In this document: positions 563 through 5,855 of the stretch, one piece after another
Layout of the letters: every line of letters begins with the position of its first letter
Position numbering within the stretch: position 1 is the stretch's first letter
IMG/VR virus record: IMGVR_UViG_3300005964_000055
Coordinates: 1 to 5,855 of that record
Length of the DNA: 5,855 nt
Reading direction: 5' to 3' (one strand)
Program-made: the position numbers and the translations under genes
Notes under the pieces: generated by a model
The model's database searches: none
What the model was told of the DNA's origin: nothing
The model's input: only the letters and a program-made list of their open reading frames with translations

Positions 563-940
563 ATGGCTAAGGAGTTTAAGTTAAGAGATAACGTGATAGT
601 TAAGATAAACGAAAATCAAGCTGAAGTAATTGTAGAAAATAAATATAAACTTTTTATAACTCTTTATGAGAATAATGTTACTGCTGAGTATAGTGATGTT
701 TCTATTTCAATTGAATATGATAAATTTGATGCTGAAAAATTAGCAAGAAAAATTTATGTTATAGTTCAACAATCTCATAGATTTTCAATTCTGTTAATTA
801 AAGAAGTTTTGGAATTGATTAAAATTAATAATATTTATGATGAAATAATAAGAGAGATAAAGAAGTTAAAGAGAGAAGAAAATATTGAAGCATTACTAAA
901 AATTTATGATTTTTTAAGTAAAAGTCAAAGCGTTAAATAA
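563..940 (+). CDS. Hypothetical viral protein, 125 aa (beta-rich N-half, charged helical C-half)
   Basis: The ORF track starts at TTG 560. The ATG at 563 is preferred because it fits the 22-23 nt GTC-to-start spacing. Composition is Lys/Glu/Ile-rich and no family motif was recognised. Confidence 0.75.
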   Translation: MAKEFKLRDNVIVKINENQAEVIVENKYKLFITLYENNVTAEYSDVSISIEYDKFDAEKLARKIYVIVQQSHRFSILLIKEVLELIKINNIYDEIIREIKKLKREENIEALLKIYDFLSKSQSVK

Positions 941-2722: not shown

Positions 2723-3646
2723 ATGAGCATTACATATGCTTCAATCTCAAGTTTATTAGCTTCACCATTTCAGCGTTTAACATCTGGAATGTGGAACACT
2801 GCATCTTTGCTTTTAATTCAGCTTTATGAGACTGGTGGAAATGCTGTAACTTCAATTCTAAAAAATGGAAACTTAACAATTCCAGGTTCAATAAATGCTA
2901 GTTCTGGATTTTTCTATGATGAAATTTATATAGCTGGACAGCCAGTTTTAACAGAACTAGATCCAATTTATATTGCTGGATTTATAGCTACTGCAAATCA
3001 ACAAATAAATTTAATTTTATATTCAAATGAACAACTTTATTATTCAATTGTCAAACTTCCGCAAGAAATTTATGAAAAAATTATAGTTGCCGTGCCTACA
3101 GCTACTTCAGTTTTAACTAAAGATACAATTGCTTTATATGAGACAATTTATAATGTTGTAAATTATTTAATTTCAAATGTTCAACAAACTAGAACTATAA
3201 TTAGTCAAGATTTACAGAATTTCTATGTTTCATTTTATGAATTAGTAAGTTCAATAGCTAAAAGATTAGGTCTTTCGTTACAAAATGCGATTTATTTTAT
3301 TGCAGATTCTATAGCTTATACATTAACATATGTTTATTTAGCTACAGTTGGTTTAGCTAATACAATTAATAAACTTTCTTTGTATTTATCACCGCCAACT
3401 ATAGAAGGTTTACAATTAGATGTCTCTACAACACCGAGTCCACTTTATTCAGGCCCGTCTATAGAAACTGTAAGAATAATTCTTCAAAATCTGAGTAATT
3501 ATATAGTTTATATTGGGAATCAATTATACAATAATTTCCCAATTTTGCCAAATGATAGTATAGAAATTCATGTTAATAATCCTAGTAATATTTACGCATG
3601 GGCTACTGGAAAATGTCAAGTTTATGCTCTATTCGAGGTTGTATAG
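2723..3646 (+). CDS. 307-aa viral protein, putative fibre/minor structural protein (N-terminal motif, helical stalk, C-terminal beta-sandwich)
   Basis: Long clean ORF. N-terminal Q-R-L-T-S-G-M-W-N motif is shared with the large minus-strand protein, the middle is amphipathic/helical, and aa 224-307 are alternating beta-strands (RIILQNLSNYIVYIG...ILPNDSIEIHV...IYAWA). CDS status is secure; the function is inferred. Confidence 0.7.
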   Translation: MSITYASISSLLASPFQRLTSGMWNTASLLLIQLYETGGNAVTSILKNGNLTIPGSINASSGFFYDEIYIAGQPVLTELDPIYIAGFIATANQQINLILYSNEQLYYSIVKLPQEIYEKIIVAVPTATSVLTKDTIALYETIYNVVNYLISNVQQTRTIISQDLQNFYVSFYELVSSIAKRLGLSLQNAIYFIADSIAYTLTYVYLATVGLANTINKLSLYLSPPTIEGLQLDVSTTPSPLYSGPSIETVRIILQNLSNYIVYIGNQLYNNFPILPNDSIEIHVNNPSNIYAWATGKCQVYALFEVV

Positions 3647-3657
3647 AGTTGATAAAA

Positions 3658-3828
3658 ATGTGGAATTATTGGATAGAAAAATTTAGAGAATGTGTAGATT
3701 TTGTTTGTTTAAACAATACAGTTCATGAATGTTATGAAATTTGTGATAAAAAAGAATTTCCAGATGATGTTAATGAATGTTATGCAATATGTAATGAACT
3801 TTATGAAGAAAATGCCAGATTTTTCTAA
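3658..3828 (+). CDS. 56-aa acidic Cys-rich microprotein (CX4C-X7-CX3C-X11-CX3C)
   Basis: Re-called start at ATG 3658 avoids a 49-nt overlap with the upstream gene and follows an SD-like GAGTTGAT (3646-3653). Protein: MWNYWIEKFRECVDFVCLNNTVHECYEICDKKEFPDDVNECYAICNELYEENARFF. It fills the gap between two co-oriented genes. Confidence 0.7.
   Translation: MWNYWIEKFRECVDFVCLNNTVHECYEICDKKEFPDDVNECYAICNELYEENARFF
3721..3795 (+). repeat. Imperfect in-frame 27-nt direct repeat, 48-nt spacing (VHECYEICD / VNECYAICN)
   Basis: gttcatgaatgttatgaaatttgtgat (3721-3747) vs gttaatgaatgttatgcaatatgtaat (3769-3795): 23/27 identical. Confidence 0.8.
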
Positions 3829-3830
3829 TT

Positions 3831-3837
3831 AGGTGAT
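3831..3837 (+). promoter_or_regulatory. Shine-Dalgarno AGGTGAT for the methyltransferase
   Basis: AGGTGAT-att-ATG(3841), complementary to the archaeal 16S 3' end and typical of internal operon genes in Sulfolobales. Confidence 0.75.
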
Positions 3838-3840
3838 ATT

Positions 3841-4317
3841 ATGGATTATAAAGATTATTTTTGTAAATTGGAATGTTGTTATTGGCACGAGTTTGATTTA
3901 GCTTATGGAAGACTTGATGTTAAAGATAGAACAATTACGATAATTGGTAATGATTGTGGAAGTTCAGCTTTATATTTTTTACTTAAAGGAGCTAAGAGAA
4001 TTATCGGATATGAAAAAAGTGATAAGTTAAATAAAAGATTTAAAGAAAAAGTTTGCAAAGAATTTAATATTTGTGATAAAGTTGATGTAAATGGAGAATG
4101 GATTGGAAAAGAATATCCTGACACTGACATTTTCGTGATGGATTGTGAAGGATGTGAAGCCAAATTAGATTTTTCTCAATTGCAAAAATATAAGCAATAT
4201 TGTATTGCTATTCATGATTGGACAAAAAACAGATTTGATTTAATGCGAAAATTATATGGCACAGTTCTAACTTTTATAACTGATGATAATAAAGAATTTG
4301 TATTTTGTAAGTTATGA
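3841..4317 (+). CDS. SAM-dependent methyltransferase, FkbM-like (resembles the 158-aa rudiviral MTase)
   Basis: Motif I region T-I-I-G-N-D-C-G-S-S-A-L-Y-F-L-L-K-G-A-K-R-I-I-G-Y-E and D-I-F-V-M-D-C-E-G-C-E match the FkbM pattern (D-x-G-A-x-x-G...V-x-A-F-E; l-K-i-D-x-E-G-x-E), followed by I-A-I-H. Confidence 0.85.
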   Translation: MDYKDYFCKLECCYWHEFDLAYGRLDVKDRTITIIGNDCGSSALYFLLKGAKRIIGYEKSDKLNKRFKEKVCKEFNICDKVDVNGEWIGKEYPDTDIFVMDCEGCEAKLDFSQLQKYKQYCIAIHDWTKNRFDLMRKLYGTVLTFITDDNKEFVFCKL

Positions 4318-4320
4318 AAA

Positions 4321-5855
4321 TTAGGCACATTGGTTATTTATAATTTTTGCATTTCCAGAAATATGTACTCCGCCAGAATTCTGTTTACAAATTAAATTTT
4401 CTATTACTGAATTATCATATAAATATATATTACCAACATTATCTTCTATATATAAAGTATTTATATATGCATTATTAAATAAAAATATACCGGCATTATT
4501 AAGTCCTATATTTACTAAATTTATACTTGTATAATCATATAAATTAATACTACCATTTTCAATTTGTATATTAATTTTATTAACAAATGAATTATTATAT
4601 AAATCCAATTCGCCATTATGAACTTGTATATTTATTGAATTTATATATGAATTATTATTAAGTTCTATATTTCCATTATTTGTTCCTATAATGAGAGAAT
4701 TTATAGATGCGTTATCTTGTAATTGTATAAATCCTTGATTTATGTATATTATAAAATTTGCAATTGTACCATAAATAGTGATAGATTGTAAATTATTATA
4801 AATTAGGAAATTTTTAATATAGACATTAGTTGGAATTGTAATATCAATTTGTGGACTTGAAATTAAAACATTTAGAAATGTATTAATTGAGTTTAATAAA
4901 TTATTAAATTCATTTCCAGTACAACTAAGCAAAAAGTATTGATTATGATTAAAAGTTAGAAATTGATTAACATTATAAACTATATCTGCAAATTGTGAAG
5001 CTTTTACTACTTGATCATGTTGAACATAAGAAAGTCTTTTTTGTAATTTTATGTTATTTTCATTTGCTAATTCTATGATAGCATTTATTAATTTATTGAA
5101 ATCGTTAGCTGTTAATGGAGTTCCTTTTTTTGCATGTAAAAGTGGAGTAAATGGATATGGTTGAAAGTTTTGGTAAAAGTTATAGAATTCATTGATTGCG
5201 GAATATATATATTCTGGATATGGAAATTGTATCAAATAATTAATATATTTATAAACACTGTAAGCTAAATATAAATCTTCTACGATTTCATTCCATAGTT
5301 TTGAAGATATTATAGAATATTTAGTTGGAGGAGATAATAATTTTGCAATTTGATAAACTGATTTACATGGTAAAACACATGGCAATAATTTAGAAGTTGA
5401 TTGACATGAAGTAGAAGAAGTAATAGAATATGATATATTATTACTATTTAGAAAATCTATTACTTGTTGATTTCCAATAAATGTAATTTCTGCTGTTAAA
5501 TATGCACCGAAATAAGGACATGTGGTCGGTGTTACGAATTCTACAGTTGTATTACTTGTAGGATAAAATGCTTGACAAGTTATAATTACTAATTGATTAT
5601 TTAGATCATTTAATGAAATTGCTGAAACATAATTTGAATTATTACATGTAGTTCCTATTGTATGACTTTGACCTTGATAGCATGCACAAAAATCTGTTTC
5701 AAATTGTCCATCAAAATTATTAATTATAGTTTCACTTTCAATTGACGAAATTGTTGTATTTTCAAAAGTCATAGTTAAATTTGGAACAATTTGACAACTT
5801 CCAACATTAATTAAATTAACTCCTTGTGGATAAATTAAAATTAACATGTAGTAGA
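4321..5855 (-). CDS. Large minor virion/fibre protein with C-terminal beta-solenoid, probably 5'-truncated (resembles the ~560-aa rudiviral structural protein)
   Basis: 508 aa from ATG 5847, but the frame stays open to the window edge (TAC TAC ATG), so the true start is probably upstream. It has a Cys/Thr-rich N-terminal region, four helical motif repeats and Asn/Ile-rich 20-aa repeats. Homology to the SIRV protein is from recalled synteny only. Confidence 0.75.
   Translation of the reverse strand, partial: YYMLILIYPQGVNLINVGSCQIVPNLTMTFENTTISSIESETIINNFDGQFETDFCACYQGQSHTIGTTCNNSNYVSAISLNDLNNQLVIITCQAFYPTSNTTVEFVTPTTCPYFGAYLTAEITFIGNQQVIDFLNSNNISYSITSSTSCQSTSKLLPCVLPCKSVYQIAKLLSPPTKYSIISSKLWNEIVEDLYLAYSVYKYINYLIQFPYPEYIYSAINEFYNFYQNFQPYPFTPLLHAKKGTPLTANDFNKLINAIIELANENNIKLQKRLSYVQHDQVVKASQFADIVYNVNQFLTFNHNQYFLLSCTGNEFNNLLNSINTFLNVLISSPQIDITIPTNVYIKNFLIYNNLQSITIYGTIANFIIYINQGFIQLQDNASINSLIIGTNNGNIELNNNSYINSINIQVHNGELDLYNNSFVNKINIQIENGSINLYDYTSINLVNIGLNNAGIFLFNNAYINTLYIEDNVGNIYLYDNSVIENLICKQNSGGVHISGNAKIINNQCA
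4345..4764 (-). repeat. Seven tandem 20-aa (60-nt) beta-solenoid repeats
   Basis: IANFIIYINQGFIQLQDNAS / INSLIIGTNNGNIELNNNSY / INSINIQVHNGELDLYNNSF / VNKINIQIENGSINLYDYTS / INLVNIGLNNAGIFLFNNAY / INTLYIEDNVGNIYLYDNSV / IENLICKQNSGGVHISGNAK: exact 20-aa period with no indels. Confidence 0.9.

What the first reader, a model, noticed from the sequence alone, without database searches (positions are those of the whole stretch)
4885..5349. Four copies of a helical 'LT(A/S)xx(W/F)N' motif in the large protein, with a fifth at the N-terminus of the 307-aa protein
Seen: SIISSKLWNEIVEDL, TPLTANDFNKLINAI, QVVKASQFADIVYNV and LSCTGNEFNNLLNSI in the large protein, and QRLTSGMWNTASLLL in the 307-aa protein (nt ~2771-2815). 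Most copies are preceded by an L-L/L-S segment with a turn. Known: similar G-x-x-L-T-A-x-x-(L/W/F)-N-x-L motifs mark attachment regions of phage tail-fibre/baseplate proteins. Inference: the two convergent genes share a docking module, so the large protein may be a branched adaptor to which the 307-aa protein attaches in the terminal fibre complex.
Basis: partly seen in the sequence, partly recalled or inferred. Interest (0 to 1): 0.65.

Follow-up and report, generated by a model that had tools for sequence, protein, structure and literature searches.

The report
Helix-start motifs in rudivirus adhesin-like protein
The repeated motif is real and conserved, but it most likely marks the start of each helix in the conserved neck of an adhesin-like protein of a Sulfolobus rod-shaped virus, and nothing shows that the 307-aa protein docks there.

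Summary
The window is a fragment of a Yellowstone-type Sulfolobus islandicus rod-shaped virus (Rudiviridae).

The large protein is cut at the window end. Its full form is about 591 aa and belongs to the SIRV2 ORF309/gp40 family. A confident AlphaFold model shows three parts: an N-terminal beta-sandwich, an alpha-helical neck and a C-terminal right-handed beta-helix like those of tailspikes and adhesins.

Each of the four copies lies at the first turn of a neck helix, in the helix-cap and hydrophobic-staple arrangement. Copies 1 and 2 are conserved across rudivirus genera. Copy 3 is conserved only in its hydrophobic positions, and copy 4 is not conserved beyond SIRVs. An unbiased self-comparison finds no significant internal repeat.

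The 307-aa protein is a core rudiviral protein (SIRV2 ORF269/gp42) with an invariant N-terminus. That N-terminus resembles copy 1 only weakly. It resembles more clearly the N-terminus of the ORF564 family, labelled structural in the SRV record and encoded just outside the window.

The complex prediction gave no answer. "Branched adaptor" is unsupported. A common N-terminal anchoring element in three neighbouring proteins remains a modest, testable lead.

The parts
4321..5853 (-). Large protein gene, with the N-terminal ~81 codons lost at the window end. It belongs to the rudiviral SIRV2 ORF309/gp40 family (SRV ORF533).
   Evidence: phrog_10791 E 5.6e-220, starting at profile position 82. A near-identical 591-aa full-length protein, P0001, exists. 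tblastn finds homologues in SIRV1/2/3, SRV, SMRV1 and SBRV1.
5404..5853 (-). C-terminal two thirds of a variable N-terminal beta-sandwich domain (P0001 residues 82-231).
   Evidence: AF2 model, all strands, pLDDT about 85-98. 29 of 84 homologues lack the domain. Only weak jelly-roll or lectin-like Foldseek rows were found.
5317..5403 (-). Cys-containing linker and lead-in (includes ...LLSPP...) before the neck.
   Evidence: Non-helical in the AF2 model, with its lowest pLDDT (65-83).
4882..5316 (-). Conserved alpha-helical neck (window residues 180-324). It is the constant core of the family and holds the four motif copies.
   Evidence: Helices at P0001 265-290, 294-305, 307-310, 330-346, 366-380 and 395-400. 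Occupancy is 0.99 and column entropy is the lowest of any region.
5272..5316 (-). Copy 1, the start of the 26-residue first neck helix. W and N are invariant.
   Evidence: Conserved in all five genera compared.
5077..5121 (-). Copy 2 (G-x-P-L-T-A-x-x-F-N...), the start of a 17-residue helix with a T...D capping box.
   Evidence: Conserved in all five genera compared.
4969..5013 (-). Copy 3, the start of a 15-residue helix. Only the aromatic and the hydrophobic positions are conserved.
4885..4929 (-). Copy 4, a 6-residue helix just before the beta-helix and probably its N-terminal cap. It is not conserved outside SIRVs.
4324..4881 (-). Right-handed parallel beta-helix built of 20-residue rungs, with a conserved C-terminal cap.
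   Evidence: VIA Z 15-17 to TibA, Ag43, phage tailspikes and PL6 lyases. DUF4097 E 1.2e-4. Length varies in 20-aa steps among homologues. A 60-nt tandem repeat lies at 4537-4658.
2723..3646 (+). 307-aa protein gene, a core rudiviral family (SIRV2 ORF269/gp42, SRV ORF286, ARV1 ORF318).
   Evidence: phrog_7221 E 3.9e-159. tblastn finds it in rudivirus isolates of nine genera or lineages: SIRV1-11, SRV, SBRV1, SMRV1, ARV1-3, SSRV1 and MRV1.
2723..2950 (+). Invariant N-terminal element of the 307-aa protein (residues 1-76). It includes the fifth motif copy at 2771-2815.
   Evidence: P-F-Q-R-L-T-S-x-M-W-N is identical in the eight genus-level sequences aligned. hhalign to the ORF564-family N-terminus gives 61-63 columns, P 5e-5 to 4.5e-4 and z = 7.2.
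3841..4317 (+). SAM-dependent methyltransferase gene between the two genes of the finding (context only).
   Evidence: phrog_5108 E 5.1e-84.

Best explanation
The four copies are the N-terminal capping signatures of four of the six helices of a conserved alpha-helical neck. The neck joins a variable N-terminal beta-sandwich to a variable-length C-terminal beta-helix in a modular, tailspike- or adhesin-like rudiviral protein of the SIRV2 ORF309/gp40 family. In each copy a small polar residue (S, T or K) sits at the helix N-cap or within one residue of it. An aliphatic residue just before the cap and the W or F four residues after it can clamp the first turn; this is the hydrophobic-staple arrangement. 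In copies 2 and 4 an acidic residue at N3 completes a capping box. The hydrophobic residues that follow (+3, +4, +7 from the aromatic) are the usual packing face of an amphipathic helix. The pattern therefore recurs because four helices in one tightly conserved thermostable domain start in the same way. It does not recur because the protein carries four docking sites. The neck is the constant part of the protein and is the likeliest place for oligomerisation or attachment to the virion. The domains on either side vary and probably contact the host. Shown here: the fold, the position of the motifs at helix starts, and the conservation. Inferred: the stabilising role of the caps, association with the virion, and the adhesin function.
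For: The AF2 model of the full-length near-identical protein has mean pLDDT 91.7. Helices start at P0001 residues 265, 330, 366 and 395, directly after S264, T329 and K365 and two residues after T393, the polar residues of the four copies (window residue = P0001 residue minus 81). The helices are 26, 17, 15 and 6 residues long, so they are not equal repeat units. An unbiased self-hhalign of the neck finds its best off-diagonal alignments in motif register, but with P only 0.13-0.25. Motif-centred segment comparisons give P 0.005-0.01, against a decoy background of 0.02-0.06. The neck is the best-conserved and always-present region: occupancy is 0.99, while 29 of 84 homologues lack the N-terminal domain and the beta-helix varies from 106 to 266 residues in 20-aa steps. 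The beta-helix matches TibA, Ag43 and phage tailspikes at Z 15-17. In other rudiviruses the gene lies in the structural gene block, directly after the ORF1070 and ORF564 homologues. The hydrophobic staple and capping box are established helix-start motifs (Harper and Rose 1993; Munoz, Blanco and Serrano 1995; Aurora and Rose 1998; cited from my own knowledge).
Against: Capping rules do not explain the Asn that follows the aromatic residue. They also do not explain why W-N in copy 1 and F-N in copy 2 are invariant or nearly so in the 84 aligned homologues and unchanged in the other genera compared, apart from M-N at copy 2 in SIRV1 and SIRV2. The loose pattern is concentrated in these two proteins within the SIRV8 proteome. 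The best off-diagonal self-alignments fall exactly in motif register, which an old duplication would also produce. Copy 3 has K, R, D or T rather than a canonical S/T cap. No data show that the protein is in virions.
Confidence: 0.62

Rival explanations
1. Shared N-terminal anchoring element. Copy 1 with its lead-in, the N-terminus of the 307-aa protein and the N-terminus of the ORF564-family minor structural protein would be versions of one short module, [LI]-[ST]-x-x-x-W-N at the start of an amphipathic helix. The module would direct all three proteins to the same site, for example the terminal plug or fibre base of the rod, or an assembly factor. Copies 2-4 would be unrelated helix caps.
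For: Among 12 rudiviral families, the 307-aa N-terminus and the ORF564-family N-terminus are reciprocal best non-self hits. hhalign scores are 29-31 with P about 4.5e-4 over 47-61 columns; with deeper alignments the probability is 66% and P 5e-5; z = 7.2 against column shuffles and the reversed control scores 9. The alignment is nearly ungapped through family-invariant positions (P, L, S/T, W, N, L, G, N-G-N-L/F, A). Copy 1 is the second-best hit of the 307-aa N-terminus (24.4, P 0.0055, background 20 or less; z = 7.4). [LI][ST]xxxWN occurs in only four proteins of SIRV8 and of SIRV2. In SIRV2 three of these are the neighbouring gp39, gp40 and gp42, with the W at residues 21-29 from the start. 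SRV ORF581, of the ORF564 family, is annotated as a structural protein.
Against: All scores are below the usual homology thresholds. HMMER alone does not link the families (iE 0.04-2.4 in a database of 115 proteins). With copy 1 as the query, the two families barely exceed the decoys (19.3 and 18.7 against 18.4). In this window's virus copy 1 is internal, about 260 residues from the N-terminus. The segments were chosen after seeing the motif. No virion data exist for gp40 or gp42.
Confidence: 0.3
2. One reading: the four copies are docking sites, and the 307-aa protein attaches to the large protein through its own copy, making the large protein a branched adaptor of the terminal fibre complex.
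For: The motif is present in both proteins. There is a weak profile similarity between copy 1 and the 307-aa N-terminus. Both genes lie near the structural gene block.
Against: The 307-aa N-terminus matches copy 2 only marginally (P 0.007-0.008, barely above the decoy background) and copies 3 and 4 not at all (P 0.44-0.45). The copies are starts of unequal helices within one compact, confidently modelled neck. Two like motifs suggest a common partner rather than binding to each other. No tail-fibre or baseplate family matches. Copy 4 is not conserved outside SIRVs.
Confidence: 0.06
3. Ancient internal duplication: the neck arose by repeated duplication of a loop-plus-helix unit that has since diverged beyond clear recognition.
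For: The best off-diagonal self-alignments are in motif register (copies 1-3 and 2-4). Pairwise segment comparisons among copies 2, 3 and 4 align in register with P 0.005-0.01. Similar lead-ins (LL, LS) precede several copies.
Against: P values are 0.13-0.25 in the unbiased test. The units are 65, 36 and 28 residues apart and the helices are of very different length. The similarity is confined to positions that any capped amphipathic helix would share.
Confidence: 0.15

Closest known systems
SIRV2 ORF309 (gp40), SRV ORF533 and SBRV1 ORF37-523 family (phrog_10791 / phrog_14297)
   Same: Homologous from the neck to the C-terminus (38-49% identity to SIRV1, SIRV2 and SIRV3; Foldseek E 1e-19 to 1e-65 to the BFVD models). 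The gene position, after the ORF1070 and ORF564 homologues, is the same.
   Different: The window's protein has the extra ~240-residue N-terminal beta-sandwich that SIRV1/2/3 and SMRV1 lack. It also has more beta-helix rungs than, for example, SIRV8 ORF45. I could find no function or virion location for the family.
Right-handed parallel beta-helix adhesins and phage tailspikes (TibA, Ag43, CBA120 TSP2, phi29 gp12)
   Same: The fold of the C-terminal 200 residues matches (VIA Z 15-17, rmsd 2.5-3.5 over 190-207 residues). A short helix precedes the first rung, as in many beta-helix proteins. The architecture is modular with a variable number of rungs.
   Different: Sequence identity is only 8-16%. 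No catalytic residues or trimer were tested. The order of domains differs from classical tailspikes, which have the particle-binding domain at the N-terminus and the beta-helix in the middle.
Helix N-cap, capping box and hydrophobic staple (a general protein structural motif)
   Same: An aliphatic residue at N', S/T at the N-cap, a small residue at N1, an acidic residue at N3 (copies 2 and 4) and an aromatic residue at N4. The helix begins at the predicted place in all four copies.
   Different: The Asn after the aromatic residue, and its invariance in copies 1 and 2, are not part of the general motif.
SIRV2 ORF564 (gp39, DUF2341), SRV ORF581 minor structural protein family
   Same: The N-terminal ~60 residues align almost without gaps to the N-terminus of the 307-aa family, including L-[ST]-x-x-x-W-N, a Gly, and N-G-N-[LF].
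   Different: The rest of the proteins is unrelated. The similarity is sub-threshold (hhalign probability 33-66%). The gene lies outside the window.
Conserved N-terminal attachment regions of phage tail fibres
   Same: Copy 2 (G-x-P-L-T-A-x-x-F-N-x-L-I) looks like that recalled consensus.
   Different: No Pfam or PHROG tail-fibre or baseplate family matched at any useful E-value (best: baseplate hub phrog_150, E 0.11). Copy 2 is internal, not N-terminal. The resemblance is a recollection, not a tested membership.

Membership tests
Rudiviral ORF309/gp40 family (phrog_10791) | Significant sequence match over the neck and the beta-helix | tested here: met
   E 5.6e-220; tblastn and Foldseek to SIRV1/2, SRV, SBRV1, SMRV1 and ARV3
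Rudiviral ORF269/gp42 family (phrog_7221) | Full-length sequence match of the 307-aa protein | tested here: met
   E 3.9e-159; 46-93% identity in every rudivirus isolate hit, covering nine genera or lineages
Right-handed parallel beta-helix (tailspike or autotransporter adhesin fold) | Stacked three-stranded rungs forming a right-handed helix | tested here: met
   AF2 pLDDT 95-98 over residues 406-591, regular 20-residue strand pattern; VIA Z 15-17
Right-handed parallel beta-helix (tailspike or autotransporter adhesin fold) | Homotrimer and/or glycan-cleaving active site, as in phage tailspikes | not tested
   No multimer model of the large protein and no catalytic-residue comparison were made
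True internal sequence repeat (four homologous units) | Significant profile similarity between units, and units of similar length | tested here: not met
   Self-hhalign off-diagonal P 0.13-0.25; helix lengths 26, 17, 15 and 6; spacing 65, 36 and 28 residues
Helix N-cap / hydrophobic staple | Polar cap residue immediately before the first helical residue; hydrophobic residues at N' and N4 | tested here: met
   DSSP helix starts at 265, 330, 366 and 395 against S264, T329, K365 and T393; N' = I, L, V, C; N4 = W, F, F, F. Contacts were not measured, as no coordinates were available
Helix N-cap / hydrophobic staple | Capping box (S/T at the N-cap with E/D/Q at N3) | tested here: inconclusive
   Met in copies 2 (T...D) and 4 (T...E); copy 3 has K...Q; copy 1 has S...L
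Phage tail-fibre or baseplate N-terminal attachment motif | Match to a curated tail-fibre or baseplate family covering the motif | tested here: not met
   Pfam and PHROGs at E up to 10 gave no tail-fibre family; best was phrog_150 baseplate hub at E 0.11. The atlas look-alikes 'tail fiber family' (0.76) and T4 gp9/10 N-terminal domain (0.84) are below the lead threshold
Shared module between the large protein and the 307-aa protein | Significant profile-profile similarity | tested here: inconclusive
   E 0.23 with shallow alignments; P 3e-4 to 5.5e-3 with genus-level alignments; z 7.4 against shuffles; rank 2 of 11 decoys from one side, not above background from the other
Physical complex of the two proteins | Predicted or measured interface | tested here: inconclusive
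   Complex prediction gave no answer, which counts neither for nor against binding
Virion (terminal fibre or plug) component | Detection in purified virions | not testable with these tools
   Record annotations mark only the ORF1070/1059 and ORF564/581 homologues as structural. Nothing was found on ORF309 or ORF269
Protein acetyltransferase (GenBank label on 307-aa homologues of isolates V60 etc.) | Match to an acetyltransferase family | tested here: not met
   No Pfam family at E up to 10 apart from a PRD row at E 5.5; no PDB sequence relative

The most novel reading that the evidence does not exclude
A short N-terminal 'W-N helix' element ([LI]-[ST]-x-x-x-W-N followed by an amphipathic helix) is a common incorporation or anchoring signal. 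It would be carried by three proteins encoded side by side in rudiviruses: the ORF564 minor structural protein, the ORF309-family beta-helix adhesin (the large protein here) and the core ORF269-family protein (the 307-aa protein here). If so, the last two are unrecognised components of the virion termini that bind host pili, and the modular large protein is a host-range determinant.
Probability: 0.25. Interest if true: 0.6.

Novelty: new member of a known kind. Interest (0 to 1): 0.33.

Why it matters
The termini of rudivirus rods bind the host's type IV pili, but only ORF1070 has been put forward as the fibre protein (PMC7911016). The roles of the neighbouring genes are unknown.

This analysis gives the ORF309 family a concrete architecture: a variable lectin-like domain, a constant helical neck and a beta-helix with a variable number of rungs. 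That layout is typical of receptor-binding proteins. The analysis also points to a possible common N-terminal element that links the family and the core ORF269 family to a protein labelled structural in the SRV record. If confirmed, this would name two more parts of the host-recognition apparatus of a model archaeal virus.

The motif itself, read as four docking sites, is most likely an ordinary helix-start signature.

Tried and rejected
1. Complex prediction of the neck (P0001 236-425) with the 307-aa protein gave no answer: score 0.00, the partner's own fold uncertain, controls not run. It counts neither for nor against binding.

2. The AF2 model of the 307-aa protein was too poor to use (mean pLDDT 41). 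I ran no fold search on it, and its helix boundaries are not evidence.

3. Foldseek against the PDB and the shape search of the ESM Atlas with the whole large model gave nothing significant for the N-terminal domain or the neck. The VIA list was filled by the beta-helix.

4. PDB sequence searches with both family profiles found no relatives.

5. Pfam and PHROGs at permissive E-values found no tail-fibre family for any segment.

6. The N-terminal domains of SIRV8 ORF45 and ORF44 are not similar by BLASTP. I had briefly suspected a shared N-terminal domain because of the chimera P0085.

7. Literature searches for ORF309, ORF269, gp40 and gp42 of SIRV2 found nothing. The SRV paper (J Bacteriol 2008) is not held.

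8. The ORF1070 and ORF488 families showed no similarity to the 307-aa N-terminus above background.

9. The large representative-protein search was not used. A match of about 30 bits would not reach significance in 1.8 billion sequences, so it could not have settled the question.

10. No reads tools were used, and nothing in the window looked human.
Full report
**What the window is.** The 5855-nt window is a stand-alone IMG/VR virus fragment. It is 84-88% identical in DNA to the Yellowstone Sulfolobus islandicus rod-shaped viruses SIRV8, SIRV9, SIRV10 and isolate V60 (Rudiviridae, Usarudivirus). GC content is about 25%.

The genes, in order:
- an amino-acid permease fragment (3-479, -)
- a 126-aa ORF (560-940, +)
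- a GT4 glycosyltransferase (914-1978, -)
- a 201-aa protein (1986-2591, -)
- the 307-aa protein (2723-3646, +)
- a SAM-methyltransferase (3841-4317, +)
- the large protein (4321-5853, -), which runs off the window

A 98%-identical full-length protein of 591 aa (P0001) shows that about 81 N-terminal residues are missing here. Window residue numbers equal P0001 numbers minus 81.

**The observation.** All five peptides are present at the stated places. The strict consensus LT[AS]xx[WF]N occurs once in each protein, and the other three copies fit only a looser pattern. Shuffles of the large protein give 0.04 loose matches against 4 observed. In the whole SIRV8 proteome the loose pattern occurs six times, four of them in these two proteins. 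The pattern was derived from these same sequences, so the numbers describe enrichment and are not unbiased probabilities. The two genes are convergent but are separated by the methyltransferase gene.

**Conservation.** In 84 homologues of the large protein, the region holding the motifs is the best conserved and is always present. S, I, S, W, N, D and L of copy 1 are invariant, and L, T, F and N of copy 2 are invariant or nearly so. Across genera (SIRV2 ORF309, SRV ORF533, SMRV1 orf12, SBRV1 ORF37-523), copies 1 and 2 persist. Copy 3 keeps only its aromatic and hydrophobic positions. Copy 4 is lost outside the SIRVs. The 307-aa protein is a core rudiviral protein, found in every rudivirus isolate hit, covering nine genera or lineages. 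Its N-terminus, including P-F-Q-R-L-T-S-x-M-W-N, is identical in the eight genus-level sequences aligned, even at 46% overall identity. Its centre varies in sequence and length, and its C-terminal ~90 residues are again strongly conserved.

**Structure of the large protein.** AlphaFold2 with the 84-sequence alignment gave a confident model (mean pLDDT 91.7). It has these parts, in P0001 numbering:
- a beta-sandwich region (1-231)
- a linker
- a helical neck with helices at 265-290, 294-305, 307-310, 330-346, 366-380 and 395-400
- a regular beta-helix of 20-residue rungs (406-591)

The beta-helix matches right-handed parallel beta-helix proteins at Z 15-17. These include the autotransporter adhesins TibA and Ag43, phage tailspikes and tail fibres, and PL6 lyases. 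Pfam's DUF4097 'toastrack' gives a sub-threshold hit there. Foldseek against predicted viral structures finds only rudiviral relatives, including one from ARV3. Neither family has a sequence relative in the PDB.

**What the motif is.** The four helices that carry the copies start at residues 265, 330, 366 and 395. In copies 1-3 this is directly after the S, T or K of the copy (S264, T329, K365); in copy 4 it is two residues after T393. In each copy the residue before that polar residue is aliphatic or Cys (I, L, V, C), and the residue four positions after it is W or F. In copies 2 and 4 the third helical position is D or E. This is the textbook helix N-cap with hydrophobic staple and capping box (established knowledge: Harper and Rose 1993; Munoz et al. 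1995; Aurora and Rose 1998). The hydrophobic residues at +3, +4 and +7 after the aromatic are the normal packing face of an amphipathic helix. The helices are 26, 17, 15 and 6 residues long and the copies are spaced 65, 36 and 28 residues apart, so they are not equal units. The last, short helix sits directly before the first rung, where many beta-helix proteins carry a capping helix. I had no model coordinates, so the staple contacts are inferred from helix boundaries.

**Is there an internal repeat?** A self-comparison of the neck profile, with no segment chosen in advance, puts its best off-diagonal alignments exactly in motif register (copy 1 with 3, copy 2 with 4). The P values are only 0.13 and 0.25. 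Segment-by-segment comparisons give P 0.005-0.01 among copies 2, 3 and 4, and copy 1 does not align to the others through its motif. Against decoy rudiviral families the background is P 0.02-0.06. An old duplication cannot be excluded, but it is not demonstrated.

**Do the two proteins share a module?**
- With the metagenome-derived, shallow alignments, the full-length profile comparison was not significant (E 0.23). Its single alignment did pair the 307-aa N-terminus with copy 1 and its LLSPP lead-in.
- After adding genus-level homologues, the N-terminal 60-80 residues of the 307-aa family align to the copy 1 segment over 29 columns. P is 3e-4 to 5e-4, z is 7.4 against 100 column shuffles, and a reversed control scores 11.
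- In a decoy test with 12 rudiviral families of comparable depth, the large family was the second-best non-self hit of the 307-aa N-terminus (score 24.4, P 0.0055; the remaining background was 20 or less). With copy 1 as the query the signal was not above background.
- Copy 2 gave only a marginal in-register match to the 307-aa N-terminus (P 0.007-0.008; score 20.2 against a decoy background of 16.9). Copies 3 and 4 showed nothing.
- The complex prediction gave no answer.

So at most copy 1 is related to the 307-aa N-terminus, and weakly.

**A stronger link outside the window.** The best non-self hit of the 307-aa N-terminus is the N-terminus of the ORF564 family (SIRV8 ORF44, SIRV2 gp39, SRV ORF581). 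SRV ORF581 is annotated as a structural protein, and the family's gene lies directly upstream of the large-protein gene in related genomes. The two N-termini align almost without gaps through family-invariant positions: P, L, S/T, W-N, L, G, N-G-N-L/F and A. hhalign gives probability 66% and P 5e-5 over 63 columns with the deeper alignment. The reciprocal best scores in the decoy test are 29-31 (P about 4.5e-4). z is 7.2 against shuffles. The ORF564 N-terminus also aligns in register to copy 1, more weakly (P 1e-3 to 0.045, z 3.8). In both SIRV8 and SIRV2, [LI][ST]xxxWN occurs in exactly four proteins: these three, plus one internal site in a glycosyltransferase. In SIRV2, where the large-family protein starts at the neck, the W lies at residues 21-29 of three neighbouring gene products. 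HMMER alone does not connect the families, so this is a lead and not an established homology.

**Most likely function.** The large protein looks like a modular adhesin or tailspike-like protein.
- The neck is constant.
- The N-terminal beta-sandwich is absent in 29 of 84 homologues.
- The beta-helix varies from 106 to 266 residues in steps of one 20-residue rung, and a 60-nt tandem repeat is visible in the DNA.
- A natural chimera joins its N-terminal ~115 residues to the C-terminus of the ORF564 family.

This pattern of a constant core flanked by exchangeable domains, together with the gene's place in the structural block, suggests a virion-associated host-interaction protein. The neck would be the part that oligomerises or attaches. 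That is inference: the records mark only the ORF1070 and ORF564 homologues as structural, and I found nothing published on ORF309 or ORF269. Reviews name ORF1070 as the candidate pilus-binding fibre (PMC7911016).

**Verdict.** The motif is best explained as a recurring helix-start signature in a conserved neck (confidence about 0.6). A common N-terminal element shared by the 307-aa protein, the ORF564 structural protein and, less surely, the start of the large protein's core remains a modest, testable lead (about 0.25-0.3). The genes are new members of known but uncharacterised rudiviral families.

Noticed in passing
outside the window; SIRV8 locus L011:22930-24666 (ORF44), SIRV2 L012:23800-25488 (ORF564): The N-terminal ~60 residues of the ORF564 family, labelled structural in the SRV record, align almost without gaps to the invariant N-terminus of the 307-aa family, including L-[ST]-x-x-x-W-N and N-G-N-[LF]. 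hhalign gives probability 33-66%, and the two are reciprocal best hits among 12 families.
   Followed up: yes
protein P0085 (298 aa, ENA metagenome): A natural chimera: the N-terminal ~115 residues are those of the large-protein family, and the C-terminal ~40 residues are those of the ORF564 family (68% identity). This points to module exchange between neighbouring genes.
   Followed up: partly
window 4324-4881 (-); tandem repeat 4537-4658: The beta-helix is built of 20-residue rungs. Among 84 homologues its length changes in steps of 20 residues (106 to 266). A 60-nt tandem repeat (2 copies, 77% match) is visible in the DNA.
   Followed up: partly
window 5404-5853 (-): The N-terminal beta-sandwich domain is missing in 29 of 84 homologues, including SIRV1/2/3 and SMRV1. 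In those proteins the protein starts a few residues before the neck.
   Followed up: partly
window 3598-3840 (+): An insertion of about 190 nt lies between the 307-aa gene and the methyltransferase gene. It carries a small Cys-rich ORF (76 codons from the first ATG, overlapping the end of the 307-aa gene). Among the loci fetched it is shared only with isolate V60 (87% nt, 78% aa). SIRV8 has the two genes 3 nt apart.
   Followed up: partly
window 2723-3646 (+): Homologues of the 307-aa protein in GenBank records OM401712-14 are labelled 'putative protein acetyl transferase'. No acetyltransferase family or any other Pfam family matches. The predicted layout is a conserved N-terminus, a variable long-helix middle (about 40 residues shorter in SIRV2 and SIRV5) and a conserved C-terminal beta region.
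   Followed up: partly
SIRV8 L011:11843-12829 (ORF28), SIRV2 L012:14792-15799 (ORF335): A rudiviral glycosyltransferase carries an internal F-T-S-W-Q-W-N-L-L segment. It is the only other [ST]xxxWN site in either proteome and the main decoy hit for the 307-aa N-terminus (11 columns).
   Followed up: no
SIRV8 L011:18813-21989 (ORF42), SIRV2 ORF1070: The N-terminus of the ORF1070 fibre candidate has a similar-looking [IL]-S-S-D-F-I-N-F segment, with the aromatic one position earlier. Profile comparison to the 307-aa N-terminus is at background level.
   Followed up: partly
window 914-940: The 126-aa ORF (560-940, +) and the glycosyltransferase gene (914-1978, -) overlap by 27 nt at their 3' ends. 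The same arrangement is annotated in SIRV8.
   Followed up: no
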